A DNA stretch of 63,810 nt, filler included, from Octopus bimaculoides (Eukaryota), in the NCBI RefSeq assembly GCF_001194135.2. It is 5 parts of 4 records of this genome, joined end to end, with 100 filler letters (N's around TTAATTAATTAA, not from the genome) between each part and the next. Parts side by side here need not be neighbours in the genome. Positions count along the whole stretch, not along the records: positions 51,271 to 61,723 come from NC_068992.1; 4 more parts are not named here. One strand, given 5' to 3'. Positions 1,376 to 61,841 of this stretch are shown in pieces (the stretch's first letter is position 1; each line of letters starts with the position of its first letter). Below the pieces are notes generated by a model. The model ran no database searches. It was not told the origin of the DNA and was given only the letters and a program-made list of their open reading frames with translations. The translations under genes were made by a program, and so were the position numbers.

Positions 1376-2938
1376 AGATTAAGAACACCTTCTGAAGAAT
1401 AAGAGACCATATGCAGATTTCTTAATAGTTAACAGAAGTTGTTATCGACAATGTAAACAGTTCCTTGATTCTTTTTAGAAGAACAACTTCGTTGTTGCAG
1501 CGAATACGCGTTTATCAAGAGTATTACAAACAAAAAGGAAACGAAGTTTTATCATCCTAGAGATGTAAGCAACAAAACCCGTGCCAGTTTATCCGTTACT
1601 TGATCCTTGCTGTGATGGACAGCCAGCTGCCCATGGGGGCTTTTTGAATGGCACATTTGTCGAAAAATTACCTCGAATTTATTTAGTAGTGCGGCCTGCT
1701 TCTCAAAAAAAAAAAAAAAAAAAAAACTAATATCCATGCCTGATCTAATTTGAGTCAACAAAGACAACTCTATATGATAGCTTGATCTACTAAAACTAAC
1801 AGCCAAAAACTCCTTCCAATCAGACTCTACCGACTTAAGCCACAACCTACCAGACGAAAACATTGAATAGTATTGTTCTTTATGCATTATGTTTGGAAGA
1901 GAAAAGAATAGATTGGACATAGCTGGAAAGTTTTTGATGATAGTATTGCAAGACACAACAGGGGATGGGGTTATACGCAGTTATTCAATATGCTAGACAT
2001 AGTGACTAAATTTCCCTCAAAGCAAATTGTACTGTCTGAAAAAAGCGATTACTTTGGCTAATGCAATTGTAGATATGATACGTTTGTAAAACATGATGCG
2101 ATCATGATCGTAATGTCTTTGGTTATATCTACTTCACCAGGAGTGATCTGGGGTTAAACAACATGAACAACACTACATGGACAAACGGAGGGCTGTAGCT
2201 GTTCGATTCGCTTGAAATAACAGCAAATCTCCATCGTGCTTGTGTGGTAAGAAACTTGCTTCCCAACCACATCATTCAATTCAATCCCACTGCGTGGCAC
2301 CTTGGGTAAGCATCTCCTACTATAGCCTTGGGCCGACTAAAGCCTTGCGAGTGGATTTGGTAAACGAAAAGTGAAAGAATAAGTACCAGGCTTAAAAAAG
2401 AAAATATAATGTACTCGGATCGATTCATTCGACTAAACATTCTTCAAGGCGGTGCTCCAGCATGACCACTTGCAAGAAATAGCAGTCCGAGTCTCCCCTA
2501 AATGAAATACTAACCCTAATAAAATGAGGGGCACAATGGTTTCTTTAATGGGAGAAGTCGATACACTATGATTTAAAAAAATGTGATTGTCACGGCTGAA
2601 ACGCCTTGGGTCATAGACCTGCGCTGGATTAAAAAAATAAAAAAACAAAGGGGAGCGTTTTACATACTATATGCAAATAGAGTAGGGGATCACAAACATA
2701 ACAGAATGAAGTAAAAATAATTCCGATAAAATGTTAATTCATGCCATTAGAAAATAAAATTTCCGTGTAAAAGTGTTTGTATCGTAAAATTAACAAAAGG
2801 GGACATGACTCTCGATAAACATTTCACTGCTTTCAGGAAAATATTCACAATGCAAGTTGGAAACGGTATCGACATTCTGTTGTCTCAACAGCTGAAACCG
2901 TCTCCTAGAAATCAAATAAATTAACAAGTTGTACTTAC

Positions 2939-3079
2939 CTTTAAATACTTCTTTTAATGATTCACTGGGAATAGTGACAGTTGTAAGACTATTCTGTATC
3001 CACTCTGGAGTAGTGGCTTTGACCTGAGACGTTGGTAATTTTAGAGTTTCATTAACTGAAGCCTTTTTGATTTCCACAA
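2939..3079 (-). CDS. Adhesion GPCR (GAIN domain) internal exon C, 141 bp, phase 1-1
   Basis: atatttcag | exon | gtaagt. Translates (L)VEIKKASVNETLKLPTSQVKATTPEWIQNSLTTVTIPSESLKEVFK(G), resembling BAI ASIQKLP...INFPM...DWARNSEDRVVIPKSIF. It is the real part of track ORF 2790..3131. Confidence 0.85.
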
Positions 3080-3099
3080 CTGAAATATATATATTTATA

Positions 3100-3183
3100 C
3101 AGTATATATCTTTATATTTACAGAAAAACAAAAGACGAAGACAGGTGTATGAACAAGCAGGTGTATTAGTTTGACACTCGGGA
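3100..3183 (-). mobile_element. 3' fragment of the repeat family at 13690-13790
   Basis: Reverse complement cccgagtgtcaaactaatacacctgcttgttcatacacctgtcttcgtcttttg matches 13705-13770. Confidence 0.6.
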
Positions 3184-3224
3184 TGCAGAAGCTACGTTAG
3201 GCAGTTCCTTCCATTACGGAAGGT

Positions 3225-9019: not shown

Positions 9020-10530
9020 TCCAAAGACATAAACGAAAAACTCTTGATATAAAAATTAGATTCTTCGTCAGGAATTACATATTGGTATGAATAATTATGA
9101 CCAACAAAAATATACAAAGATCTGTCGTGGCCCAGACGGGAACGAACAGATAATAATAGAATGAAAGATAAAACACTCCAGCGTTTTATTAACATTAAGA
9201 AATTAAAGATTAATAACTACAAACCGATATATTATCCACTAAAAAGTACTAAATGTCCTAATTCAAAGTTAATAATATGGTAATATCAAACGAAAATAAA
9301 AATAAAAAGAAATTCTTTTGCTTACAAAATAGCCATCTACAAGTAAAACAGTGGAACGGAGAAAGAGAAAGAGAAAGAATGCTTGTGTCTGTGATTATTT
9401 TTGTACCTCATTATTTAAATAGCAATTAGCCACCAATTATAAACAGCACAGGGTCAGCTAATAAATAAATATATAGAAATATCAAAACGGATGTAAGATA
9501 ATAAATGAATGATATGAAAAACTTCACCGTCTCACAATCACAGATGAACCAAAATTAAAGTACACACAATATCTTAAAAATTAAATTAAAATTTTTTTAA
9601 ATTTTTAAATCTAAAAAATTTTTTAATTTAAAAAAAATATGAGAGAGGAACCAACATGAGTAGTAAATACAAAGGGTTAAACCGAAATTATTAATCTCTC
9701 AAAAACCACAAAATCAAAATAAAACCAGATAGAATAAAACACCTATAATAGACATCCTTATTTAAAAATTTTAAACGCACATTTATTCTTATGAACACAG
9801 TAAAAACCCCTTTCAGATTTAGAGTTTAGCAGCCTTCTTCTAGAAAATAGTATCAAAAATAATTCCTCAGAACAACGAGAGCAGAACCTATTGCCAATCC
9901 TATAAACCGGGGTCGTCCTTAAAATGCTCCATTTTTTTATTATCTTTATGATTCCAGATGAAATTACTAAGACTAGTAGAAGCCCTATTTTTGTTCCTAA
10001 AGTAATGGTAATGATTCAAAACCCTTTTCTTAATATAGTTAGCAGAAGAACCAATATAAAAGTAATCATTACTTTCAGAAATAACCTTAGCTTGATAGAC
10101 GACTTCCCTACGCTTACAAAAATTACCAAATAAAAAATGTGCAACAACATATCCGCCGATATGAACGACGAAAGGAAAGCAAAAGGGCTCGGGGACAGTT
10201 TCTGAAGGACACTTTCGGGATTACTAAGAAGCTGTTGATGAATCTGTTCAAAAGGTCGGAATCTCTGGGATCCCTGGATGTGTTGAACACTGTTTTTAAT
10301 TTCTTAATCTTTTTAATTAGATAACCCTATTATTTTCCTAGTTAATTTTTGTTTCATTAACTCTATCTGTTTTTACTAGATATTTACATATTGTGAATTG
10401 TAATGCTAATAAAGCCCTGGAGTGGTTTATATATAAATATATAAATATATATATATATATATTTCTGGTTTTGAATTGTCTGGCGTTCTAGTTATCTTTC
10501 ATTCTATTATTATTATTTGTTCGTTCCCGA
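9020..10530 (-). mobile_element. Second Penelope-like (Nematis-type) remnant
   Basis: Minus strand 10130-9758: FCKRREVVYQAKVISESNDYFYIGSSANYIKKRVLNHYHYFRNKNRASTSLSNFIWNHKDNKK / WSILRTTPVYRIGNRFCSRCSEELFLIL...LLNSKSE...CVHKNK (one frameshift). Pieces at 10395-10530 are inverted copies of 9135-9215. Confidence 0.8.
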
Positions 10531-11398
10531 GGGCGGTGAGCTGTCGGAATCGTAAGCATATTGTTTTTGCAAATACTGAATATATATTTTTCATGTATAT
10601 TCTTTACTAGGACTGAAGCGGCGGACTTAGATCTTTGACATCCCTTTGAAGGAATTCAGTCCTCACCTCCTTTATATATATATATATANNNNNNNNNNNN
10701 NNNNNNNNNNNNNNNNNNNNNNNNNNNNNNNNNNNNNNNNNNNNNNNNNNNNNNNNNNNNNNNNNNNNNNNNNNNNNNNNNNNNNNNNNNNNNNNNNNNN
10801 NNNNNNNNNNNNNNNNNNNNNNNNNNNNNNNNNNNNNNNNNNNNNNNNNNNNNNNNNNNNNNNNNNNNNNNNNNNNNNNNNNNNNNNNNNNNNNNNNNNN
10901 NNNNNNNNNNNNNNNNNNNNNNNNNNNNNNNNNNNNNNNNNNNNNNNNNNNNNNNNNNNNNNNNNNNNNNNNNNNNNNNNNNNNNNNNNNNNNNNNNNNN
11001 NNNNNNNNNNNNNNNNNNNNNNNNNNNNNNNNNNNNNNNNNNNNNNNNNNNNNNNNNNNNNNNNNNNNNNNNNNNNNNNNNNNNNNNNNNNNNNNNNNNN
11101 NNNNNNNNNNNNNNNNNNNNNNNNNNNNNNNNNNNNNNNNNNNNNNNNNNNNNNNNNNNNNNNNNNNNNNNNNNNNNNNNNNNNNNNNNNNNNNNNNNNN
11201 NNNNNNNNNNNNNNNNNNNNNNNNATATATATATATATATATATATACATATACATACACATATATATACATACATATATATAAACACACACATACATGT
11301 CCATATATACACGCGTGTAAAAGTGAGTGCGTCTAAGTCTTTTCGTATGTGTGTGTGTGTGTGTGTGGTGTTCTTATGTACATTATGGAATGCAATAC

Positions 11399-16605: not shown

Positions 16606-18187
16606 TCAGCTGAAAATCACTACGATCGTGAATAAAAGGCTCCCTCCGTTAATTCATGAAGATTAACCAGTTATTTAACCAGATGTATGTATGTGTGTGT
16701 ATGTATGTATATATGCATAGACTCACACACATCTCTCTCTATATGTGTGTGTTTGTGTGTGTATAGTGAAACTGTACAACTCTCTCGGTAAAAAGTGGTA
16801 GTAGCCGCCATTATAAAAAGACCAAAAGCCGGTCGACAAGAATAAGGTCAGAAGGTCCAGAGTACGTGTAGGCTGTGCTGATGGACGTGTCTATGCTGAT
16901 ACAGTAATTATACTGCGATACTGAGTGGACGTTATAACAACCTGTTGAGGATAATAACACTGTACGACTGGGTGTTACTGTACGAGTGGGTGCCACACAG
17001 AAATATTCTATATATAAACATGAAAGGCATAAGGACATAAGGATGCAGGAAATGTGTCAAGGCTGACAGGAAGCGGTGCAGCTTCCTAGGGCTAAATAGC
17101 AGTAGTATGATTCCCTTATTGGGACTGTCACGTTAAGTTGACAGCATACAACTACTTTATCGTATCACTACTGCTTAAGTCTCTCTGAGAGATTTAGAAA
17201 TGTATCATTTCTAATTGTATATATACAATTTTTGGGCTAATTTTGCAAGAAAATCGGCATTATTTCTATTTGCTGCCGATAAAAAACTGCGCTTGCGCGG
17301 TGGATTTTAAAAATTATAACATGCAAGCACGAGACATGTTCTGTATTGCCTCGTACTTATAATATGTAGGTGCCTTGTGTCAAAAAATATCATTCATAGA
17401 AAGACGTTCTCTCGACATGATTCACACGCGCCTGACTCGGGCTCAGAAGTTACTGCCCGAGTCGTTACCTATTATCGTAAAAATTAAAAGTAATTCAAAT
17501 TCAATGATTTCTTGAAACAATAAATTTCTATAGAGATTATGATTTAAATTCCAATCTATGAAAAGTTTCCGTTCTACGATAGTCTTCAGGTAAGGAAAAA
17601 TTATCCAGCAACTCGGGCTACTACGAACGAGCCTGATGGGTATAAAAAAAACTAATTGGCATCTCTTGACAAGAGCACAGTCGACGGTCAGATCGCTGAT
17701 GTTTTTTGTGCATTCGCTATTGATTCTGTGCGTTTGTGCGTAAAGATCAGTTGTATTTTGCAGAGATGCTTTATTTTTACCCTCAACTTAGNNNNNNNNN
17801 NNNNNNNNNNNNNNNNNNNNNNNNNNNNNNNNNNNNNNNNNNNNNNNNNNNNNNNNNNNNNNNNNNNNNNNNNNNNNNNNNNNNNNNNNNNNNNNNNNNN
17901 NNNNNNNNNNNNNNNNNNNNNNNNNNNNNNNNNNNNNNNNNNNNNNNNNNNNNNNNNNNNNNNNNNNNNNNNNNNNNNNNNNNNNNNNNNNNNNNNNNNN
18001 NNNNNNNNNNNNNNNNNNNNNNNNNNNNNNNNNNNNNNNNNNNNNNNNNNNNNNNNNNNNNNNNNNNNNNNNNNNNNNNNNNNNNNNNNNNNNNNNNNNN
18101 NNNNNNNNNNNTGTGTGTGTGTGTGTGTGTGTGTGTGTATGCACACATACATACATACATATGTATATATATATATGTATGTATGTA

Positions 18188-18916
18188 TTAAGGGAAATCA
18201 ACCCCGAAATACTAAACCAGACTTAAAAATACTCCCATACATCTCCACACATAACCCTAGAAGCAACGAAGCCTTTAACGTTATCATCCAAAATCTACCC
18301 ATCCTCACAAAAGATAAAACAATGAACAAAATTTTAGGCTCACACAAAATTATCAAAAGTAAAATGCAACCTAAATCACTGAAAAAGATATTAACCAGCG
18401 CAAGACTGTATCCATTAACAACAGAACGAAAAGTGAAAAAATGTGGTCGACCTAACTGTGGTACTTGCGCCCACCTTTTGGAGGGTTCAGAGTTCCACTT
18501 TAAACAAGGTGAAATATTTAAGATTAAATCAAATTTCACCTGTGCTTCGGAAAATCTAATCTATACCATTACATGCTTAGGGTGTGGTAATAATTATATT
18601 GGCCAAACAGGAATATCACTCCGTAGAAGAACAACTCTCCACAAAGAACAAATCCACCACCCACAATATAGACAAATACAGGTCAGTGGACACATAGAAA
18701 GGTGTGCGAGGAATCTTAATCCTAATTTCCTAATTTTTGCCTTCTATCAATGTTCACAGAACACCTTAATACAACAAAGAATGAATAAAGAGGCAACTTT
18801 CATCAATAAATATCTTCCACAACTAAATATGAACACATAACATAATATAGAACACTACTAAACACCCATTTAATACCACTAACTCCCATACATCCCATAC
18901 ACCATTCACATTACAG
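18188..18916 (+). mobile_element. Penelope-like element 3' part (Neptune-type GIY-YIG endonuclease)
   Basis: Stop-free frame of ~216 aa to 18840: LPYISTHNP..., KCGRPNCGTCAHL (Zn-finger-like), FTCASENLIYTITCLGCGNNYIGQTGISLRRRTTLH, EATFINKYLPQLN. Confidence 0.88.
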
Positions 18917-35906: not shown

Positions 35907-36179
35907 GAGACAGACAGACAGAGACAGAGACAGAGAGGGGGGAAGTCAGAAGAGACTGCAGGGAAAGAAAGAGTAAGATCGAAGGAAGAAATGAAAAGAA
36001 ACTAAACCGATAGATGGAGCCATGGTCCGCTCAACGGCAATACCAATATGGCAGAATTGCCAAAAGGTCTTTTTAGTGAAGGCAAACTCTAAAACGTTTT
36101 ATGCATGAGGGAAGCACATAACAATGATGAATTGCTCCTAGATTTGAACTTGTCGCATCGCTGCACAGAGTGTTGGCCG

Positions 36180-51299: not shown

Positions 51300-52450
51300 A
51301 CAGTTATTCGGTAGCCATGATAAAACTCAGAGTTTCGGATGCCGGGGCGGAAACCCACGCCGCTATCTCTTCAGTTATCTGGCCATCGAAGAATGCTATG
51401 AAAATGACCGTTGTTTCAAGCCTATGCTCTCCAACAGACGATTTATTTATAAATGCGGTTTGCAATAAGACATGGTCAAAATAAAAGCCTTTTTTAAGCT
51501 TTAGAAACAAATTCAGTAATCATTATCATTTTGCAATAGTAAAAAAAAAACTAAAATTATTTAAAATTTACTAATACGTACATACAATTTGTTGGTTTAT
51601 ATCGCGGATGTAGATGGCCATGGATCATCAACATCAACCGCTGACTCTGGCTGTTCTTGTTCGATGGGCTTAAAAAACCGACTGAGAGTTCCTTGAACTG
51701 CCTTCTTCTTTTCCTCAAGGATTACATTATAAGGAGCAAAAGCTTTGTGACAAACCCCCATAATCTTGGAAAAGCGTTGAGCATTTGGAGCCATATCCTC
51801 GAATATAGAAAGACCTTTTTCGATATATGTAAATGCTTGCTGAATTTTATTAATGATAAAGTGTCCGACTTTCTCTTCTCAGGTTCGACTTTCTCTTCGT
51901 CTACGCTAAAAATCTTTTCGGGAAGAAACCTTTTTATTTCGATGATTTTCTTTAATGCATTAGGAAATTCCGCTGCTGCTTGTTCGTCAGCAGATGCACT
52001 TTCGCCTTGCTTCTTAATGGAGTGATAACTTCGCTCCTTAAATCTCATGAACCATTCTTGAACTCTACATCTTTCTCATCTGGATATTTTTGCTTCAGGT
52101 TCTCAAACAAAAACAGTGATTTCTCTTGACTAAGAGTAGAACGCTGACGAATCAACCTAACAATCCAAAGAGAAAGAAGACTTAGCATTTCTTCAAAGAT
52201 TTTGTCTCTTTTCTTATTGATGACAATGTTCTTCATCCCTGGGGCTTCAGATTTGATATGTGCTAAAGTCTTGTCCTTGTTATGCACAATCGTCGGTACA
52301 GTTGTCCGACTCATCCCAAATAATCGTGCAATTGCTACCGCTTTTTCACCTTTTACATGGTGTTTTCTCATAGCCAGTTTATCTTTCAGCGTTATAGCAT
52401 GACACTTAGCACTTTCACAATGAATTTTCTGAGAAGCTATGGGGCAAAAA
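51300..52450 (-). mobile_element. Tigger/pogo transposon remnant, internally deleted
   Basis: GEKAVAIARLFGMSRTTVPTIVHNKD, EEMLSLLSLWI, LFENLKQK, HSIKKQGESASADEQAAAEFP..LKKII..FLPEKIFSVDE, and the C-terminal KKKAVQGTLSRFFK. Confidence 0.85.
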
Positions 52451-52607
52451 ATAAAGACACAAATGAATGTGAAAGTAGTCCATAAACAGACGTAAACAAA
52501 TCTGAATTTAAAACAGTCACTGGAATCACGATATTAGAACTATAGTGCAATATGAGCTCCGAAAGATCGATAAATAAGACAACACAGCTGATTTCATATA
52601 TATATAG

Positions 52608-52992
52608 GCGCTGGCGTGGGTGTGTGATAAGAAGCTTGCTTCCCAACCACATGATTCTAGGTTCAGTCCCACTGCGTGGCATCTTGGGCAAGATTTTTTT
52701 TACTATAAGCCTCGGGCTGACCAAAGTCTTGTGGGTGGATTCGGTAGGTGGAAACTGAAAGAAGTCCGTCGTATATATATTATATACGTGTGTGTGTGTA
52801 TCTGTGTTTGTCCCCCTCCCATCGCTTGACATCCGATGCTGACGAGCTGACGTACCCGTAACTTAACGGTTCGGCCAAAGAGACCGATAGAATAAGTACT
52901 AGGTTTACAAAGAATAAGTCCTGGGATCGATTTGTTTGATGAAAGGCGGTGCTCCAGCATGGCCGCAGTCAAATGACTGCAACAAATAAAAG
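52608..52992 (+). mobile_element. SINE family A copy
   Basis: Full head-to-tail match to 48398-48900; inserted next to the Tigger remnant. Confidence 0.85.
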
Positions 52993-53002
52993 AATATATA
53001 TA

Positions 53003-53049
<47 letters not shown>

Positions 53050-53816
53050 NNNNNNNNNNNNNNNNNNNNNNNNNNNNNNNNNNNNNNNNNNNNNNNNNNN
53101 NNNNNNNNNNNNNNNNNNNNNNNNNNNNNNNNNNNNNNNNNNNNNNNNNNNNNNNNNNNNNNNNNNNNNNNNNNNNNNNNNNNNNNNNNNNNNNNNNNNN
53201 NNNNNNNNNNNNNNNNNNNNNNNNNNNNNNNNNNNNNNNNNNNNNNNNNNNNNNNNNNNNNNNNNNNNNNNNNNNNNNNNNNNNNNNNNNNNNNNNNNNN
53301 NNNNNNNNNNNNNNNNNNNNNNNNNNNNNNNNNNNNNNNNNNNNNNNNNNNNNNNNNNNNNNNNNNNNNNNNNNNNNNNNNNNNNNNNNNNNNNNNNNNN
53401 NNNNNNNNNNNNNNNNNNNNNNNNNNNNNNNNNNNNNNNNNNNNNNNNNNNNNNNNNNNNNNNNNNNNNNNNNNNNNNNNNNNNNNNNNNNNNNNNNNNN
53501 NNNNNNNNNNNNNNNNNNNNNNNNNNNNNNNNNNNNNNNNNNNNNNNNNNNNNNNNNNNNNNNNNNNNNNNNNNNNNNNNNNNNNNNNNNNNNNNNNNNN
53601 NNNNNNNNNNNNNNNNNNNNNNNNNNNNNNCTGGGAACGAATTAAAGTTGTTTGATCCTGTGTCAGTTCTGATAAAAAAAATCTCATGATTAGTGGTGTT
53701 CCAGCCGTGAACTACCTCGTCGTTTTGTTAATATACGACGTTACAAATTTCGTCGGGATTGACTTTGCTTTTCATCTCTTTCGGGGGGGGGGGTCAATAA
53801 AATTAGTACCAGTTGA

Positions 53817-54460
53817 AGGAGGCGCAGGCATGGCTGTATGGCTGTGTGGTAAGTAGCTTGCTTACCAGCCACATAGTTCTGGGTTCAGTCCCACCGCGTG
53901 GCACCTTGGGCAAGTTCAAATTCCGCCGAGGTCGACGTCTCCTTTCGTCCTTTCAGGGTCGATAAGTTAAGTGCCAATGGAGTACTGGAATCGATGTAAT
54001 TGATTTAACCCCTCCCCTAAAAATATTGGCCTGTACCAATAGTGTGAGAAATGAAGGAATGAGCTGGCAGAATCGTTAAGATGTCGGACAAAATGCTTTG
54101 GAGTATTTCGTCCGTCTTTACGTTTTGAGATCAAATTCTGCCAAAGTCGTCTTTGCCTTTCATCCTTTCAGGGTCGATAAATTAAGTGTCAGTTGACCGA
54201 TAAAATGCCACATTTCTCACAATATCAATTAATGTCATATTATTAAGGCGGCGAGATGGCAGAATCGTTAGCACGCCGGGCGAAATGTTTAGCGGTATTT
54301 CGCCTGTCGCTACGTTCTGAGTTCAAATTCTACCGAGGTCGACTTTGCCTTTCATCTTTTCGGGGTCGATAAATTAAGAACCAGTGAAACATTGGGGTCG
54401 ATGTAATCGACTATTCTCATCTCCCACCCAAATCAGGCCTTGTGCCTATAGTAGAAAGGA
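53817..54460 (+). mobile_element. SINE A head fused to SINE B, followed by two more SINE B copies
   Basis: Family A head 53817-53912 joins gttcaaattccgccgagg of family B; further B copies at about 54055-54195 and 54245-54460. Confidence 0.8.
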
Positions 54461-55570: not shown

Positions 55571-56080
55571 CTGAGGGTATTAAACCAGAAAGTTCATCAG
55601 AGCAATGATCATGAAAATACTTAGAGAAAGGACACACTGAAGAATCATTTCGTTGATGAGCCAAAGACTCCTAACTTAGCAAAAAGAAGAGGGCCACCAT
55701 GTTAACAAGTAGATTCTGAATTCGATCAAGCATGTTAAGACACTCAGAGGAGTCTAAAGATAACAACAATACTGAGCCTTGTTGAGCTTTGATTTGATTT
55801 TGTAATCAGAAATAAACATCAACAGACAGAACGACATTCAAATCTTTCTCAAGAATATAAAAGAAGCGAAGTAAATAGATTGAAACCAAGTCTTGGGTTT
55901 AGGAATACGTTGAAATATGTTCTACTTTATGCTACTCTATTTCGTTAGCCAAAAATATTAAGAATCTGTGCAAAAAAATTTGATAAAATATTCTCCTTCA
56001 TGAAACACGTTCATTTCTCACAAACTTTGTTAATTGAAGGAAAATCAGTTTACTTTGAAAGATATTCGACTATGTTGTTT

Positions 56081-56090
56081 ATGACGTCAT
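56081..56090. promoter_or_regulatory. CRE-like palindrome upstream of the FAF1-like ATG
   Basis: Perfect ATGACGTCAT 84 bp before the ATG; an ATTGG (reverse CCAAT) lies about 15 bp upstream of the ATG. Motif match only. Confidence 0.35.
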
Positions 56091-56173
56091 GAAATTCACA
56101 AGGAACTTTAAGGCTCTGAGATGCCTTACGACACGCTTTGAATCTACAAGTGTCATTGGTTAGATCTTTGTAA

Positions 56174-57232
56174 ATGGCAGCTGGAAAACGTACCCAAAAG
56201 CGGCAGACAGCGTCGAAGAGGCCAGCTGAATCAACACCATGTTCTTCATCAGTTTCGTGTTTGGAGGAGGATTCATCAGCTCATGGGCATCCGAAACGTT
56301 TCAAAAGCACATCCTCTAACCAGGCATCCGATATCTATTCAAGAACACTGGAATCCGCAATTAAAGATTCGTTAAAGCTGAGTGCAAGCTGTAGAAAGCC
56401 TTTGGTTCTGTATTTATACGGCTGTGATGATGATAGACTGTTGAAGTCGAAAACAGTCTCAGAATATCTTTGCAATAGATTCGCAGTTTGGGCACGGAAA
56501 CTTGATACAGACGAAAATAAGAAACAAACATTTTCATTGTTAAAAAAGGAGTTTGGGAGCGATATTACAAAGAAGGTGAAACAATACGAACAAAACCGTC
56601 TACCTATAGTACTAGTCTTGGGAAAAGTGCAGTGCAGTTTGGTTATTCTTGGTGAGTTGGACAAGGTTCAAGATCCAGTGAAATTCCAAGCATTCTTGGA
56701 ATCAGTTTTAGAGGTATTTCCTGATATGATCAGACCAGAAATATTATCTGAAAGTTTGAGAGAAGAGAGAGCTTCTTTGATACGAGAGCAGGATCAAGAG
56801 TATGAGGAGTCACTAAAAAAGGATAGAGAAAAAGAACAGAAAAAACGACTTCTAGAAGAAAATAAGCGACTGGAAGAAGAAAAACGAAAACAACAGGAAA
56901 TTCGATACCAGAAAGAAGAAGAGAAAAGAAAACAAGTATTGCAGTCTTTAAATCAACAATTATCTGAAGAACCAAATGTCAATTTAAACAAACCGATCAC
57001 AATATTGCGCTTTCGAACACCAGCTGGAGATGTATTGACACGCCGATTTTTCGTTGAAAATACATTGAGGACGGTCCTTAATTTCGTGGAAGCGAATGGT
57101 TTCAGTATTGATTGTTTTAAGATCCTTGCGTTTCATCCTAAACAAGATATAACTCAATTAGACAGAGAAAAATCGATTGAAAATCTTCAGTTATACCCAC
57201 GCCTAACTCTTTACATTCACCGTAGACATTAA
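56174..57232 (+). CDS. FAF1-like: FAF1-like UBX-domain protein (UAS + coiled coil + UBX), intronless, lacking the FAF1 N-terminal UBA/UBL region
   Basis: ATG at 56174, TAA at 57230-57232, 352 aa with no frameshift. Colinear with the FAF1 C-terminal half: TLESAIKDSL..RKPLVLYLY, VSEYLCNRFAVWARKL, EFGSDI, LPIVLVLGK, REQDQEYEESLKKDREK, LRFRTPAGDVLTRRF, GFSIDCFKIL..PKQDITQLDREKS...LYPRLTLYI. Confidence 0.9.
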   Translation: MAAGKRTQKRQTASKRPAESTPCSSSVSCLEEDSSAHGHPKRFKSTSSNQASDIYSRTLESAIKDSLKLSASCRKPLVLYLYGCDDDRLLKSKTVSEYLCNRFAVWARKLDTDENKKQTFSLLKKEFGSDITKKVKQYEQNRLPIVLVLGKVQCSLVILGELDKVQDPVKFQAFLESVLEVFPDMIRPEILSESLREERASLIREQDQEYEESLKKDREKEQKKRLLEENKRLEEEKRKQQEIRYQKEEEKRKQVLQSLNQQLSEEPNVNLNKPITILRFRTPAGDVLTRRFFVENTLRTVLNFVEANGFSIDCFKILAFHPKQDITQLDREKSIENLQLYPRLTLYIHRRH

Positions 57233-58607
57233 AGAACATTTGTCTTCTTTTGATTGTTCATTTACATGACTTGTATAAATCGAAAACAATTTCTTGCACA
57301 CTTCTGTGTATATATATATATATATATATATNNNNNNNNNNNNNNNNNNNNNNNNNNNNNNNNNNNNNNNNNNNNNNNNNNNNNNNNNNNNNNNNNNNNN
57401 NNNNNNNNNNNNNNNNNNNNNNNNNNNNNNNNNNNNNNNNNNNNNNNNNNNNNNNNNNNNNNNNNNNNNNNNNNNNNNNNNNNNNNNNNNNNNNNNNNNN
57501 NNNNNNNNNNNNNNNNNNNNNNNNNNNNNNNNNNNNNNNNNNNNNNNNNNNNNNNNNNNNNNNNNNNNNNNNNNNNNNNNNNNNNNNNNNNNNNNNNNNN
57601 NNNNNNNNNNNNNNNNNNNNNNNNNNNNNNNNNNNNNNNNNNNNNNNNNNNNNNNNNNNNNNNNNNNNNNNNNNNNNNNNNNNNNNNNNNNNNNNNNNNN
57701 NNNNNNNNNNNNNNNNNNNNNNNNNNNNNNNNNNNNNNNNNNNNNNNNNNNNNNNNNNNNNNNNNNNNNNNNNNNNNNNNNNNNNNNNNNNNNNNNNNNN
57801 NNNNNNNNNNNNNNNNNNNNNNNNNNNNNNNNNNNNNNNNNNNNNNNNNNNNNNNNNNNNNNNNNNNNNNNNNNNNNNNNNNNNNNNNNNNNNNNNNNNN
57901 NNNNNNNNNNNNNNNNNNNNNNNNNNNNNNNNNNNNNNNNNNNNNNNNNNNNNNNNNNNNNNNNNNNNNNNNNNNNNNNNNNNNNNNNNNNNNNNNNNNN
58001 NNNNNNNNNNNNNNNNNNNNNNNNNNNNNNNNNNNNNNNNNNNNNNNNNNNNNNNNNNNNNNNNNNNNNNNNNNNNNNNNNNNNNNNNNNNNNNNAATGC
58101 GACCCTGAAGAGATGGAGTATCCGGCAATTTATAATTTATAATTTATAATGTGTTATAATATGTTATAATATTTTATGAGACATTTTATGATGTGGTTTA
58201 TTTATCCTGGATACTCTATTGAAATGTGCATAGGTTTGGCTTATTGTTGTTGTTTCTTCAATGCATCGATTTTGAGCTCTATTTTTTTAATATATATATA
58301 TATATATATATGCGCGCACACACAAGGACAGACGTATATTTACAAGTAACGCATGCAAGACATATAGTCATACACACGCACATACCACAGGCATACATCT
58401 ACATAATCCATCCCCACATACATACATACATACATACATACATACATACATACATACATGCATACATACATTTTTACTGACGCATTTTTACGCCATCTAA
58501 TTTTCTTGTTCAGAAGAAACAGTCACATATCCAGAAATATATATTAATATACCTTTATCTGATTACCTGTGTCTTTCTTGCAGTGTTTTTAACAAAACCT
58601 CTGGAAG

Positions 58608-59185: not shown

Positions 59186-60578
59186 CGAGGAAAGCTTGTC
59201 AGGACAGAAGATATATGGTTGCCAAGTGGTGAAATGATGAAGGCAATTCAACCTTAAACTAGTTATAAATACTTGGGAATACTTGAGGCAGACGGAATCA
59301 AACACAACGACATGAAGGAAAAAACAAAAAGAGAGTACCTGCGGCGACTGAGGAAAATATTGGCTTCAAAGCTGAATGCCAGGAACATAATTACGGCAAT
59401 AAACTCGCGTGCAGTCGCAGTAGTTCGGTATGGTGCAGAAACCCGAAATGGAGAGAGGAGGAGCTAAAGGAGATGGACAGGAAGTCAAGAAAGCTCCTAA
59501 CGATTCACGGAACCCATCATCCACGTGCAGACACTGATCGCCTATAGATGAAGAGAGCAAATGGAGAAAGGGGAATGATAAGTGCGGAAGACTGCGTAGA
59601 TATTGAACTCGAAAGCTTAATGAGATACCTAGCTCAAAGTAAGGAAACCTTGATAGTGTCAGTTAGGAACGAGAGAATATTGAAAGCAGAGAAAAAAAGG
59701 AAAAACAAAGGAAGAAGTACAAAAAAGACGTGAAGAAGAATTACGCAAGAAGGGACTACACAATTCCATGTAGCCACACCAGAAGTTGCTGGAAAAAAGG
59801 TGGGATTGACTGATGAAAGGAACGTTAAAACAAAGAGACCGAGAGCACTATACGGGCAGCGTAAGACCAAATTTTAGCCACGAACTGGAAGGTCAACCTT
59901 AGAAATGAGAAAGTGTCTCCGCTGTGCCGCATCTGCAACAGAGTGGATGAAAGTATTACCCATATCACGAACGAATGCCCTAAACTTACTCCAAACCACT
60001 ACAAGTTGTGGCGACACGATCAGGTAGCGAAAGTGTTACATTGGAAACTGTGCGTAAAATGGGGGCTAGAGAGAGGCAAGACGTGGAATGAGCACAAACC
60101 ACAGAGAGTGGCGGAATCGGAGACTAGCAAAATCCGCAGGAATATCCCAATCCAAACAGATCATGTGCTAGAGAATAGCAAACCGGACTTAGCTGCTATA
60201 TAGTTGATGTTGCATGACCCTTTGACCTACGAATAGTCAAGAAAGAAAGCGAAAAGGTAAATAAATACAACCCTCTTAAGTACGAAATAGCACGGCTACG
60301 AAAAGTGAAGAAGGTGAAGATAGTGCCAATTATTGTTGGCTCCTTGGTAACAGTATCAGAAGGCATCGAGGAGAATATAAAGGAAATTGGAATAGAGTAC
60401 CCAGTAGAACTGTTACAAAAGGTTACCCTCCTTGACACGGCCAGAATAATCAGGAAAGTATTAGACAGCTGAAAAGAACGGGTAGCATGGTACCGTAGGC
60501 TGCAGGTAGTAAGCCCGCTACACAGGCAAGACTCCAGGAGTTCCAACAAAACTTGTGATAAAGAGAAATAATAATAAA
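59186..60578 (+). mobile_element. R4/Dong-type fragment 2 of the stack
   Basis: SYKYLGILEADGI...AINSRAVAVVRYGA...CRICNRVDESITHITNEC..RHDQVAKVLHW...PDL...KYNPLKYEI...VPIIVGSL...TARIIRKVLDS* (stop 60472), short AAT tail; internal deletions. Confidence 0.88.

Positions 60579-61342: not shown

Positions 61343-61390
<48 letters not shown>
61179..61390 (+). mobile_element. R4/Dong-type 3' fragment 4 of the stack
   Basis: HILRKTLSIQ* plus a 3' UTR nearly identical to 6290-6400 (reversed) and an (AAT)n tail; starts exactly at the end of the previous tail. Confidence 0.8.
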
Positions 61391-61392
<2 letters not shown>

Positions 61393-61841
61393 TGATCTTT
61401 TCTACTCTAGGCAGAAGGCCCTAAATTTTTGGGGAGTGGGCCAGTAGATTAAGTCGACTGCAGTACGCAACGGGTATTTAATTTATCGCTCCGGAAAGAT
61501 GAAAGGCAAAGTCGACCTCGGCGGAATTTGAACTCAGAACATCGATAATAACAATGACTGAAATATTTTCTGAGAAACATTGCAAGAGATCTGTGTCAAG
61601 AGATCTGAGATAAAAAAATTTATTTGTTCTCGTCGTGTTGTTGTTGTTGTTGTAATCTATAATAGCACTAACGGTTAGACACTTTATCAATATATGACAT
61701 AGGTAGATAAAGACTAGGAAATCNNNNNNNNNNNNNNNNNNNNNNNNNNNNNNNNNNNNNNNNNNNNTTAATTAATTAANNNNNNNNNNNNNNNNNNNNN
61801 NNNNNNNNNNNNNNNNNNNNNNNTGTATATAAAACATTCCC

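What the first reader, a model, noticed from the sequence alone, without database searches (positions are those of the whole stretch)
56174..57232. Intact intronless FAF1-derived gene with a new N-terminus and an altered p97-binding loop
Seen: a 352-aa frame with no disablement, comprising UAS, coiled coil and UBX, preceded by ~55 unrelated Ser/basic residues (KRTQKR, SKRP, PKRFK; NLS-like). An in-frame TAA sits directly before the ATG. The UBX FPR loop reads HPK, and about 10 residues are missing from the UAS domain. Established: FAF1 is multi-exon over this region in vertebrates, and uses UBA/UBL domains for substrate binding and the UBX FPR loop to bind p97/VCP. Inference: a divergent retrogene under selection, possibly a nuclear or substrate-free p97 modulator specific to this lineage.
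Basis: partly seen in the sequence, partly recalled or inferred. Interest (0 to 1): 0.72.

Follow-up and report, generated by a model that had tools for sequence, protein, structure and literature searches.

The report
Truncated FAF1 retrogene in octopuses
Octopuses carry, besides the normal multi-exon FAF1 gene, an old intronless copy of its back half that has been kept intact by selection and still holds the parts that, in human FAF1, are enough to switch on the p97 protein-unfolding machine; it is a tidy but not extraordinary case of a retrogene.

Summary
Window 56174-57232 (+), from Octopus bimaculoides, is an intact 352-aa single-exon ORF. It has a disordered basic/Ser-rich N-terminus, a FAF1-type UAS domain, a roughly 95-residue helix and a UBX domain.

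The retrogene reading is supported:
- The canonical 619-aa FAF1 lies on another chromosome as a 46-kb gene. There, the homologous region is split over 8-9 exons.
- Intact single-exon orthologues exist in O. sinensis, a third Octopus and Argonauta hians. dN/dS is 0.13-0.19.
- Between Octopus and Argonauta only the CDS and a 15-nt CRE-containing promoter element are conserved.
- A 338-aa relative from an unidentified organism groups with the short copies. Their clade sits beside all cephalopod FAF1 with 67-78% bootstrap, which suggests an origin before octopod diversification.

- The UAS gap is 7 residues, not 10.
- Octopus FAF1 itself reads FPP, not FPR. K at the third loop position is common. 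H is rare but recurs elsewhere.
- RefSeq's name, "FAF2-A-like", is misleading.

Likely function: a UBA-less accessory activator of p97-UFD1-NPL4. Eight of nine residues of the FAF1/FAF2 activation motif are kept, and the human FAF1 helix+UBX fragment suffices in vitro. Expression, p97 binding and nuclear localisation were not tested.

The parts
56174..57232 (+). Complete single-exon CDS (352 codons plus TAA) of the short FAF1-derived gene
   Evidence: ORF list. Pfam FAF1 UAS plus UBX. Exact protein found in O. bimaculoides assembly GCA_001194135.2, CM046612.1. Orthologues 97%, 91% and 65-72% identical. dN/dS 0.13-0.19.
56171..56173 (+). In-frame TAA directly upstream of the start codon
   Evidence: All five orthologues have an in-frame stop 0-10 codons upstream and no upstream in-frame ATG.
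56078..56092 (+). Conserved promoter-proximal element TTTATGACGTCATGA holding a full palindromic CRE (TGACGTCA, 56082-56089), 85 nt before the ATG
   Evidence: The 15-mer is exact in three Octopus genomes and in Argonauta, although the rest of the upstream DNA does not align. TGACGTCA occurs once in the window, against 0.08 expected. Function as a promoter element is inferred.
56174..56326 (+). Residues 1-51: new, disordered, basic/Ser-rich N-terminal tail (KRTQKR, SKRP, PKRFK)
   Evidence: pLDDT below 50 for residues 1-51. No similarity to FAF1 cDNA or genes in any frame. Highly conserved in Argonauta, and SKRxAEST is also present in P0124. K41-R42-F43-K44 fits K-[KR]-x-[KR].
56327..56668 (+). 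Residues 52-165: UAS (thioredoxin-like) domain, strongly diverged
   Evidence: Pfam PF21021. Foldseek match to the human FAF1 UAS, 2ec4. Only 13 of 34 positions conserved in canonical FAF1 are kept; there is a 7-aa deletion and both conserved Cys are lost.
56675..56959 (+). Residues 168-262: long helix, the 'coiled coil' or UBH of FAF1/FAF2
   Evidence: The AF2 model gives a single helix, H168-262, with pLDDT of about 82-98 over these residues. 16 of 23 conserved FAF1 positions are kept.
56768..56848 (+). Residues 199-225: equivalent of the FAF2 activation motif (286-312), the ubiquitin-binding helix core
   Evidence: L202, D207, Y210, S213, L214, D217, K220 and E221 match FAF2 L289, D294, Y297, S300, L301, D304, K307 and E308 (FAF1 V507, D512, Y515, S518, L519, D522, K525). 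Only the R290/K508 equivalent is changed, to I203. Residue roles are from PMC13578712 and PMC12630741.
56993..57223 (+). Residues 274-350: UBX domain
   Evidence: Pfam PF00789. The model superposes on FAF1 UBX bound to p97-N (3qq8_B), rmsd 0.6 A over 79 residues, TM 0.97. 15 of 18 conserved positions are kept, including the two Arg of LRFRTP.
57134..57142 (+). H321-P322-K323: the UBX S3/S4 loop at the place of FPR
   Evidence: Census of 378 family members: FPR 194, WPR 81, YPR 26, [FYW]PK 36, HPK 6, HPR 2, HPV 1; octopus FAF1 has FPP.

Best explanation
This is a functional, ancient, 5'-truncated retrocopy of the cephalopod FAF1 gene.

Origin. An mRNA of the multi-exon FAF1 gene was reverse-transcribed from its 3' end and inserted on another chromosome. 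This captured only the back half of the protein: UAS, long helix and UBX. At the new site the copy gained its own start codon. It also gained about 40-50 new codons that encode a disordered basic/Ser-rich tail, and a small promoter with a CRE. Selection has kept it since before Octopus and Argonauta separated, and probably since before the octopod-decapod split.

Mechanism (inferred, not shown). The protein most likely works as an accessory cofactor of the p97/VCP-UFD1-NPL4 unfoldase. The UBX domain docks on the p97 N-domain. The helix next to it carries the conserved activation / ubiquitin-binding motif, which contacts UFD1 and K48-linked ubiquitin and speeds substrate unfolding. It lacks the UBA and UBL domains of full FAF1. 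It would therefore be a minimal activator whose targeting comes from the new N-terminal tail, possibly nuclear import, rather than from ubiquitin binding by a UBA.
For: Shown here:
- Intact 352-aa ORF with FAF1 UAS and UBX domains.
- FAF1 relatives score E 1e-40 to 1e-37, while FAF2 scores only 1e-13.
- Canonical FAF1 (619 aa) is present in O. vulgaris and O. sinensis as a 46-kb gene on CM016862, whereas the short gene is on CM016870. The same holds in Argonauta, where FAF1 is a 24-kb gene on another contig.
- The homologous region of the parent is split into 8-9 exons in both genera, and the copy has no intron.
- dN/dS is 0.13-0.19 with dS up to 1.0, and every region is below 0.3. Fisher's test of non-synonymous against synonymous changes gives p = 4.6e-26.
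- Between Argonauta and Octopus, DNA conservation covers the CDS only (from 5 nt before the ATG to the stop codon), plus a 15-nt CRE element.
- Stop codons lie just upstream of the ATG in all orthologues.
- The short clade is monophyletic (99-100% bootstrap). Without distant outgroups it joins cephalopod FAF1 in 67-78% of replicates.
- The fold is kept.
- UBX keeps 15 of 18 conserved positions, the helix 16 of 23 and the UAS 13 of 34.
- The activation motif keeps 8 of 9 key residues in all short copies.

From the literature:
- A human FAF1 fragment with only the coiled coil and UBX is as active as full-length FAF1 in stimulating p97-UFD1-NPL4, and the UBA is dispensable (PMC9377798).
- The UBH-UBX module of FAF1/FAF2 roughly doubles the working ATPase and unfolding activities (PMC12630741).
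- The FAF2 activation motif 286-312 and the UBX domain are the critical parts (PMC13578712).
Against: - No poly(A) remnant or target-site duplication is visible; only a (TA)n microsatellite lies about 95 nt after the stop.
- With FAF2 outgroups the tree position collapses through long-branch attraction (short clade plus cephalopod FAF1 in only 37% of replicates).
- Only 5 signature columns are shared exclusively with cephalopod FAF1.
- No expression evidence could be obtained. The Logan contigs that carry orthologues end in repeats and may be genomic.
- The first loop residue is His rather than an aromatic F/W/Y, which might weaken insertion into the p97 pocket.
- The equivalent of FAF2 R290, whose mutation abolishes activity in FAF2, is Ile203 here.
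- The UAS domain has lost most conserved positions.
- p97, UFD1 and ubiquitin binding and nuclear import are all untested.
Confidence: 0.72

Rival explanations
1. It is a competitive or dominant-negative p97 regulator. It occupies p97 N-domains through its UBX domain, or pairs with full FAF1 through the helix or UAS, without delivering substrates. It would thereby damp FAF1- or UBX-dependent pathways.
For: It lacks the UBA and both UBL domains. The UAS has diverged (13 of 34 positions). The R290/K508-equivalent residue is Ile203, and R290E abolishes FAF2 stimulation (PMC13578712). Small N-domain binders such as SVIP act as competitors (PMC5389986).
Against: The other 8 key residues of the activation motif are invariant under strong selection. 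A pure competitor would not need them. UBA and UBL are dispensable for activation in human FAF1/FAF2.
Confidence: 0.15
2. It is an old DNA-level paralogue of FAF1, or the octopus FAF2 orthologue as the RefSeq name implies, that lost its introns secondarily. On this reading it is not a retrocopy.
For: No poly(A) tail or target-site duplications. The tree placement is only moderately supported. RefSeq calls it 'FAS-associated factor 2-A-like'.
Against: All 7-8 introns of the homologous region are absent at once. The copy starts inside the parent's coding region, as 5'-truncated retrocopies do. FAF2 is a much weaker match (1e-13 against 1e-40), and there is no UBA or hydrophobic hairpin. In 1.84 billion representative proteins, the only short-clade members found were octopods and P0124.
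Confidence: 0.08
3. It is a processed pseudogene or a mis-annotated ORF with no protein function.
For: No direct expression evidence was obtained here. The surrounding DNA is repeat-rich, with transposon fragments.
Against: The ORFs are intact in 4-5 species at dS up to 1.0. dN/dS is 0.13-0.19 with p = 4.6e-26. Conservation is confined to the CDS. A promoter element is conserved.
Confidence: 0.02

Closest known systems
FAF1 (FAS-associated factor 1; UBXN3A), including the octopus's own FAF1 (P0276, 619 aa)
   Same: It has a UAS domain, a long helix with the activation / ubiquitin-binding motif and a C-terminal UBX domain, in the same order. It is 30-36% identical over about 300 residues. The predicted UBX is virtually superposable on human FAF1 UBX.
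   Different: It has no UBA, UBL1 or UBL2 and carries a new 40-50-residue disordered N-terminus. The gene is intronless and has its own CRE promoter element. It evolves about four times faster than FAF1 (70% against 93% identity between Octopus and Argonauta). The UAS is degenerate, and the loop reads HPK (octopus FAF1 FPP, human FPR).
Engineered human FAF1-delta480 / FAF1 UBH-UBX fragments (PMC9377798; PMC12630741)
   Same: The octopus protein retains the helix+UBX part that is sufficient in vitro to stimulate p97-UFD1-NPL4. Its key residues are L202, D207, Y210, S213, L214, D217, K220 and E221.
   Different: The octopus protein is a natural gene and also keeps a diverged UAS domain. It has an extra N-terminal tail. 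Its activity is untested.
FAF2 / UBXD8 (the name RefSeq gives it: 'FAS-associated factor 2-A-like')
   Same: It is of similar length and has the same UAS-helix-UBX order. It has the same activation-motif spacing, D-x2-Y-x2-S-L-x2-D-x2-K-E.
   Different: It has no UBA and no membrane hairpin. Sequence similarity to FAF2 is far lower than to FAF1 (E 1e-13 against 1e-40).
Functional 5'-truncated retrogenes that gained new N-termini and promoters (general class)
   Same: It is intronless, sits on a different chromosome from a multi-exon parent, covers only the 3' part of the parent and is under purifying selection.
   Different: Poly(A) and target-site duplications are no longer detectable. The expression pattern is unknown.

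Membership tests
FAF1/FAF2 (UAS-UBX) family of p97 cofactors | FAF1-type UAS domain (Pfam PF21021) | tested here: met
   PF21021 E 8.9e-16, 58.4 bits against a cut-off of 27. Foldseek match to 2ec4. However, only 13 of 34 conserved positions are kept.
FAF1/FAF2 (UAS-UBX) family of p97 cofactors | C-terminal UBX domain (Pfam PF00789) | tested here: met
   PF00789 E 4.3e-13, 49.7 bits against a cut-off of 21. rmsd 0.6 A to 3qq8_B.
Canonical FAF1 architecture | N-terminal UBA and two UBL domains | tested here: not met
   No Pfam UBA or UBL hit. The alignment shows that the protein starts just before the UAS.
FAF2 / UBXD8 | UBA plus hydrophobic membrane hairpin, and closest sequence relatives are FAF2 | tested here: not met
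   No UBA was found and the N-terminus is polar and disordered. FAF2-like proteins score E of about 1e-13, against 1e-40 for FAF1.
UBX domains that bind the p97 N-domain | R...FPR signature: conserved Arg in strand 1 and an aromatic-cisPro-Arg loop (PMC5389986) | tested here: inconclusive
   The Arg residues (R279, R281) and Pro322 are kept and K323 is a common substitute. H321 replaces F/W/Y, which happens in 9 of 378 family members. Binding was not measured.
UBH-UBX / activation-motif activators of p97-UFD1-NPL4 | Helix adjacent to UBX with the residues equivalent to FAF2 L289, R290, D294, Y297, S300, L301, D304, K307 and E308 | tested here: met
   8 of 9 are kept in all short copies. The R290 equivalent is I203, or M203 in Argonauta.
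UBH-UBX / activation-motif activators of p97-UFD1-NPL4 | Stimulates unfolding and ATPase of p97-UFD1-NPL4 | not testable with these tools
   Needs biochemistry.
Processed retrogene | No introns where the parental gene has them, with the parent present elsewhere in the genome | tested here: met
   The parent is a 46-kb gene whose homologous region lies in 8-9 exons, on another chromosome. The same holds in Argonauta.
Processed retrogene | Poly(A) tract and target-site duplications at the insertion | tested here: not met
   None is visible in O. sinensis or Argonauta. This is expected to have eroded at this age (dS of about 1).
Processed retrogene | Purifying selection (functional, not a pseudogene) | tested here: met
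   dN/dS 0.13-0.19, Fisher p = 4.6e-26.
Processed retrogene | Transcribed | not testable with these tools
   No RNA-seq access. The Logan contigs are of uncertain origin, DNA or RNA.

The most novel reading that the evidence does not exclude
Coleoid cephalopods may have evolved, by retroposition, a dedicated minimal activator of the p97-UFD1-NPL4 unfoldase. It would consist of helix plus UBX only, steered by a new NLS-like, probably phospho-regulated tail and a CRE-driven promoter. It would act in the nucleus, for example in chromatin extraction or replisome disassembly, or in a restricted tissue such as germline or nervous system. That would make it a natural counterpart of the engineered FAF1/FAF2 fragments and designed p97 activators described in 2022-2026.
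Probability: 0.25. Interest if true: 0.55.

Novelty: new variant of a known kind. Interest (0 to 1): 0.38.

Why it matters
The gene is a natural experiment on what part of FAF1 is enough. A lineage has kept only the UAS-helix-UBX half under strong selection for a very long time. The activation motif is untouched, while the UAS drifted and the UBA and UBL domains are gone. That independently supports the recent biochemical conclusion that the helix+UBX module is the functional core of FAF1/FAF2. It also offers a compact, evolution-tested p97 activator to study. In addition, the work corrects a misleading database name (FAF2-A-like) and adds a well-documented old retrogene to cephalopod genome biology. 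It does not open a new kind of system.

Tried and rejected
- Only-FAF1-locus hypothesis: rejected, because canonical FAF1 was found in Octopus and Argonauta.
- FAF2 identity: rejected.
- Terminal exon of a larger gene: rejected. There are in-frame stops just upstream in all species, conservation starts at the ATG, and gene models are single-exon in two annotated genomes.
- Origin of the new N-terminus from another frame or part of FAF1: tblastn of the N-termini against FAF1 cDNAs and genes gave nothing, even at E = 10.
- Synteny between Argonauta and Octopus within +/-10 kb: only shared repeats, so uninformative.
- Poly(A) and target-site duplications: none found.
- Identifying the organism of P0124 (runs ERR12921336-41, ERR14857108, SRR9969974): the accession search in papers found nothing. 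Sample overlap with Sepia-type FAF1 contigs was absent.
- Using the Logan contigs as expression evidence: rejected for the Octopus contigs, which end in tandem repeats and are colinear with the genome. Undecided for the P0124 contigs.
- NJ tree rooted with FAF2: dominated by long-branch attraction.
- Rfam scan of the piece: nothing found.
- Literature search for this gene, or for FAF1 retrogenes: nothing relevant.

Full report
**Source and observation.**
The piece comes from Octopus bimaculoides. The exact protein is found once, in assembly GCA_001194135.2 on chromosome CM046612.1 at 17.63 Mb. The ORF at 56174-57232 (+) is 352 codons long, starts at ATG and follows directly on an in-frame TAA.

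- Pfam finds a FAF1-type UAS domain (PF21021, residues 42-158, E 8.9e-16) and a UBX domain (PF00789, residues 274-347, E 4.3e-13).
- The best solved relative is human FAF1 (E 5.1e-39, aligned over residues 55-350).
- An AlphaFold2 model (mean pLDDT 81) shows residues 1-51 disordered, a UAS fold at 52-165, one helix at 168-262 and a UBX beta-grasp at 275-350.
- Foldseek matches the UBX to human FAF1 UBX bound to the p97 N-domain (3qq8_B, rmsd 0.6 A over 79 residues) and the UAS to 2ec4.
- The loop that reads FPR in human FAF1 reads H321-P322-K323.

The UAS gap is 7 residues rather than 10. Homology to FAF1 may begin at about residue 42.

**Orthologues and selection.**
The word-indexed protein search found three close relatives:

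| Source | Identity | Length |
|---|---|---|
| O. sinensis (RefSeq 'FAS-associated factor 2-A-like') | 97% | 352 aa |
| Unnamed Octopus, Logan runs SRR11869391 and SRR11869384 | 91% | 352 aa |
| Argonauta hians | 65-72% | 339 aa |

In both annotated genomes the CDS is a single exon.

Nei-Gojobori estimates give dN/dS of 0.13 (O. bimaculoides against O. sinensis), 0.17 (against the third Octopus) and 0.16-0.19 (Octopus against Argonauta, dS 0.84-1.0). Every region, including the new N-terminus, is below 0.3. Fisher's test of non-synonymous against synonymous changes gives p = 4.6e-26.

Between Argonauta and O. sinensis, blastn aligns only positions 9996-11021 against 9996-11060, that is, from 5 nt before the ATG to the stop codon. 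All other matches are dispersed repeats. All orthologues have an in-frame stop 0-10 codons upstream and no upstream in-frame ATG. This is a protein-coding gene under purifying selection. It is not a pseudogene and not the last exon of something larger.

**Parent gene.**
A search with Sepia FAF1 returned 'FAS-associated factor 1' of Octopus vulgaris/sinensis (P0276, 619 aa) and of Argonauta hians (P0275, 625 aa), both with UBA, UAS and UBX domains.

- In O. sinensis the gene spans 46 kb on CM016862, while the short gene is on CM016870. In Argonauta it spans 24 kb on a different contig.
- tblastn resolves at least 15 coding exons. The part homologous to the short gene (from about residue 300 to the end) lies in 8-9 exons in both genera.
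- The short gene has none of these introns and starts inside the parent's coding region. That is the pattern of a 5'-truncated retrocopy.
- No poly(A) remnant or target-site duplication remains; only a (TA)n tract lies about 95 nt after the stop. At dS of about 1 this is not surprising.

**Which parent, and how old.**
An exhaustive HMMER scan of 1.84 billion representatives gave, after the octopod cluster, one 338-aa protein (P0124, 40% identity, E 9e-56). This was followed by full-length FAF1 proteins of many phyla (E 1e-40 to 1e-37, including Sepia FAF1). FAF2-like proteins appear only at about 1e-13. The RefSeq name is therefore misleading.

P0124 comes from Logan contigs of at least seven runs whose organism I could not identify. 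It shares derived characters with the octopod genes:

- His in the UBX loop.
- Ile at the K508-equivalent position.
- SKRxAEST in the N-terminal tail.
- CRE-like sites upstream.

In neighbour-joining trees the short clade including P0124 has 99-100% support. With distant FAF2 outgroups it is pulled to the longest branch. Without them it joins cephalopod FAF1, as sister to octopod plus decapod FAF1, in 67-78% of replicates. Five signature columns are shared only with cephalopod FAF1, against two and one for other groups.

The short gene evolves about four times faster than FAF1 (70% against 93% identity between Octopus and Argonauta). At that rate, 40% identity to P0124 is about what an octopod-decapod distance (FAF1 73%) would give. 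My reading is that retroposition took place in a cephalopod ancestor before the octopod-decapod split. This step is inferred and only moderately supported.

**Promoter.**
Upstream DNA is not alignable between Octopus and Argonauta. The exception is an exact 15-mer, TTTATGACGTCATGA, lying 60-95 nt before the ATG in all four octopod genomes. Its core, TGACGTCA, is a full CRE. It occurs once in the whole window, against 0.08 expected. The P0124 contig has two similar sites. I infer a small CREB/ATF-type promoter acquired at the insertion site.

**The UBX loop.**
Among 378 FAF1-family UBX domains gathered here, the loop reads as follows:

| Loop | Count |
|---|---|
| FPR | 194 |
| WPR | 81 |
| YPR | 26 |
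| [FYW]PK | 36 |
| HPK | 6 |
| HPR | 2 |
| HPV | 1 |

The three non-octopod HPK cases include a nematode (Diploscapter) and a slime mould (Heterostelium). The octopus's own FAF1 reads FPP and Sepia's reads YPQ. The yeast OTU1 UBX-like domain uses YPP in the same pocket (PMC5389986).

The change that is special to the short clade is therefore F/Y to H. The Pro and a basic third residue are in place, and so are the strand-1 arginines. Whether His weakens p97 binding cannot be decided from sequence.

**Mechanism.**
At positions conserved in at least 85% of canonical FAF1 proteins, the short protein keeps 15 of 18 in UBX, 16 of 23 in the helix and only 13 of 34 in the UAS. The UAS losses include both conserved cysteines and part of the WAWD motif. 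Selection has thus centred on helix plus UBX.

Recent work shows that this is the active core:

[quoted passage not shown] The UBA is dispensable and UBX alone is inactive (PMC9377798).
- The helix is a ubiquitin-binding helix whose FAF1 residues V507, Y515 and L519 matter. The UBH-UBX module roughly doubles the working ATPase activity (PMC12630741).
- In FAF2 the activation motif 286-312 contacts the UFD1 UT3 domain and ubiquitin through R290, D294, Y297, S300, D304, K307 and E308 (PMC13578712).

The short protein has L202, D207, Y210, S213, L214, D217, K220 and E221 at the matching positions in every species. Only the R290/K508 equivalent differs (I203).

I therefore propose that it is a UBA-less accessory activator of p97-UFD1-NPL4. 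The disordered tail (KRTQKR, SKRP, PKRFK, Ser-rich and acidic stretches) is conserved from residue 1 in Argonauta. It may supply nuclear import or regulation, but only K41-R42-F43-K44 fits a classical NLS pattern and nothing was tested.

The main rival is a competitive inhibitor of p97 N-domain cofactors. The I203 change and the missing UBA favour it. The invariance of the rest of the activation motif disfavours it.

**Novelty and verdict.**
No paper on this gene, or on FAF1 retrogenes, was found. The gene model exists in RefSeq under a misleading name. It is a new architectural variant within a well-known family, made by a well-known process.

Confidence by claim:
- The gene is real and under selection: high.
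- It is a FAF1 retrocopy: good.
- It originated in stem coleoids: moderate.
- The proposed biochemical role: plausible but untested.

Interest is moderate to low (0.38).

Noticed in passing
window 56174-56338 (codons 1-55): Synonymous divergence between Octopus and Argonauta is lower in the new N-terminal region (dS 0.38, 11.5 changes in 39 sites) than in the rest of the gene (0.8-1.3). This hints at an extra constraint on the DNA or mRNA near the start, such as translation initiation or promoter-proximal elements. Alternatively it may be sampling noise.
   Followed up: no
window 52045-52371 (-): A 108-aa ORF has a weak match to the CENP-B N-terminal / HTH DNA-binding domain (E 0.0019, below Pfam's cut-off). 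It is probably a fragment of a Tigger/pogo-type transposase.
   Followed up: partly
window about 52600-53000, 53840-54460 and 61390-61540 (piece coordinates 1346-1726, 2570-3190, 10126-10270): Short dispersed repeats of about 100-400 bp occur in several copies around the gene in O. bimaculoides and O. sinensis. One family of about 100 bp is also present in several copies in the Argonauta locus, so it is an old SINE-like family shared by octopods.
   Followed up: no
window 59913-60203 (+): A 96-aa ORF (MSPLCRICNRVDESITHITNEC...) resembles, from memory, the Cys/His-rich C-terminal tail of non-LTR retrotransposon ORF2 proteins. Pfam gave no hit, so this is unverified.
   Followed up: partly
window 57322-58100 and about 53010-53640: Assembly gaps (runs of N) open inside (TA)n microsatellites on both sides of the gene. 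In O. sinensis the same place, about 95 nt after the stop codon, holds about 300 bp of (TA)n. The 3' UTR and poly(A) site of the gene therefore cannot be read in this assembly.
   Followed up: partly
L006-L012 (contigs carrying P0124): Seven independent Logan contigs start within 2 nt of each other, and four end at the same base 22 nt after an AATAAA. This could mean they are transcripts rather than genomic DNA. The two CRE-like sites would then lie inside the 5' UTR. The organism is unknown.
   Followed up: partly
P0055 (Mya arenaria, 345 aa) and other short FAF1-like entries: Several other animals have database entries of 300-400 aa with only UAS plus UBX. Most look like canonical FAF1 in sequence (FPR loop, no 7-aa gap) and are probably partial models. 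Whether any is an independent truncated copy was not examined.
   Followed up: no
L015 about 35982-36089 and L013 about 17343-18220 (parental FAF1): Homology between the short gene and its parent begins close to a parental exon boundary (about residue 307 of P0276). The copy could therefore derive from a transcript that started at an internal exon rather than from random 5' truncation. The alignment is too diverged to decide.
   Followed up: no
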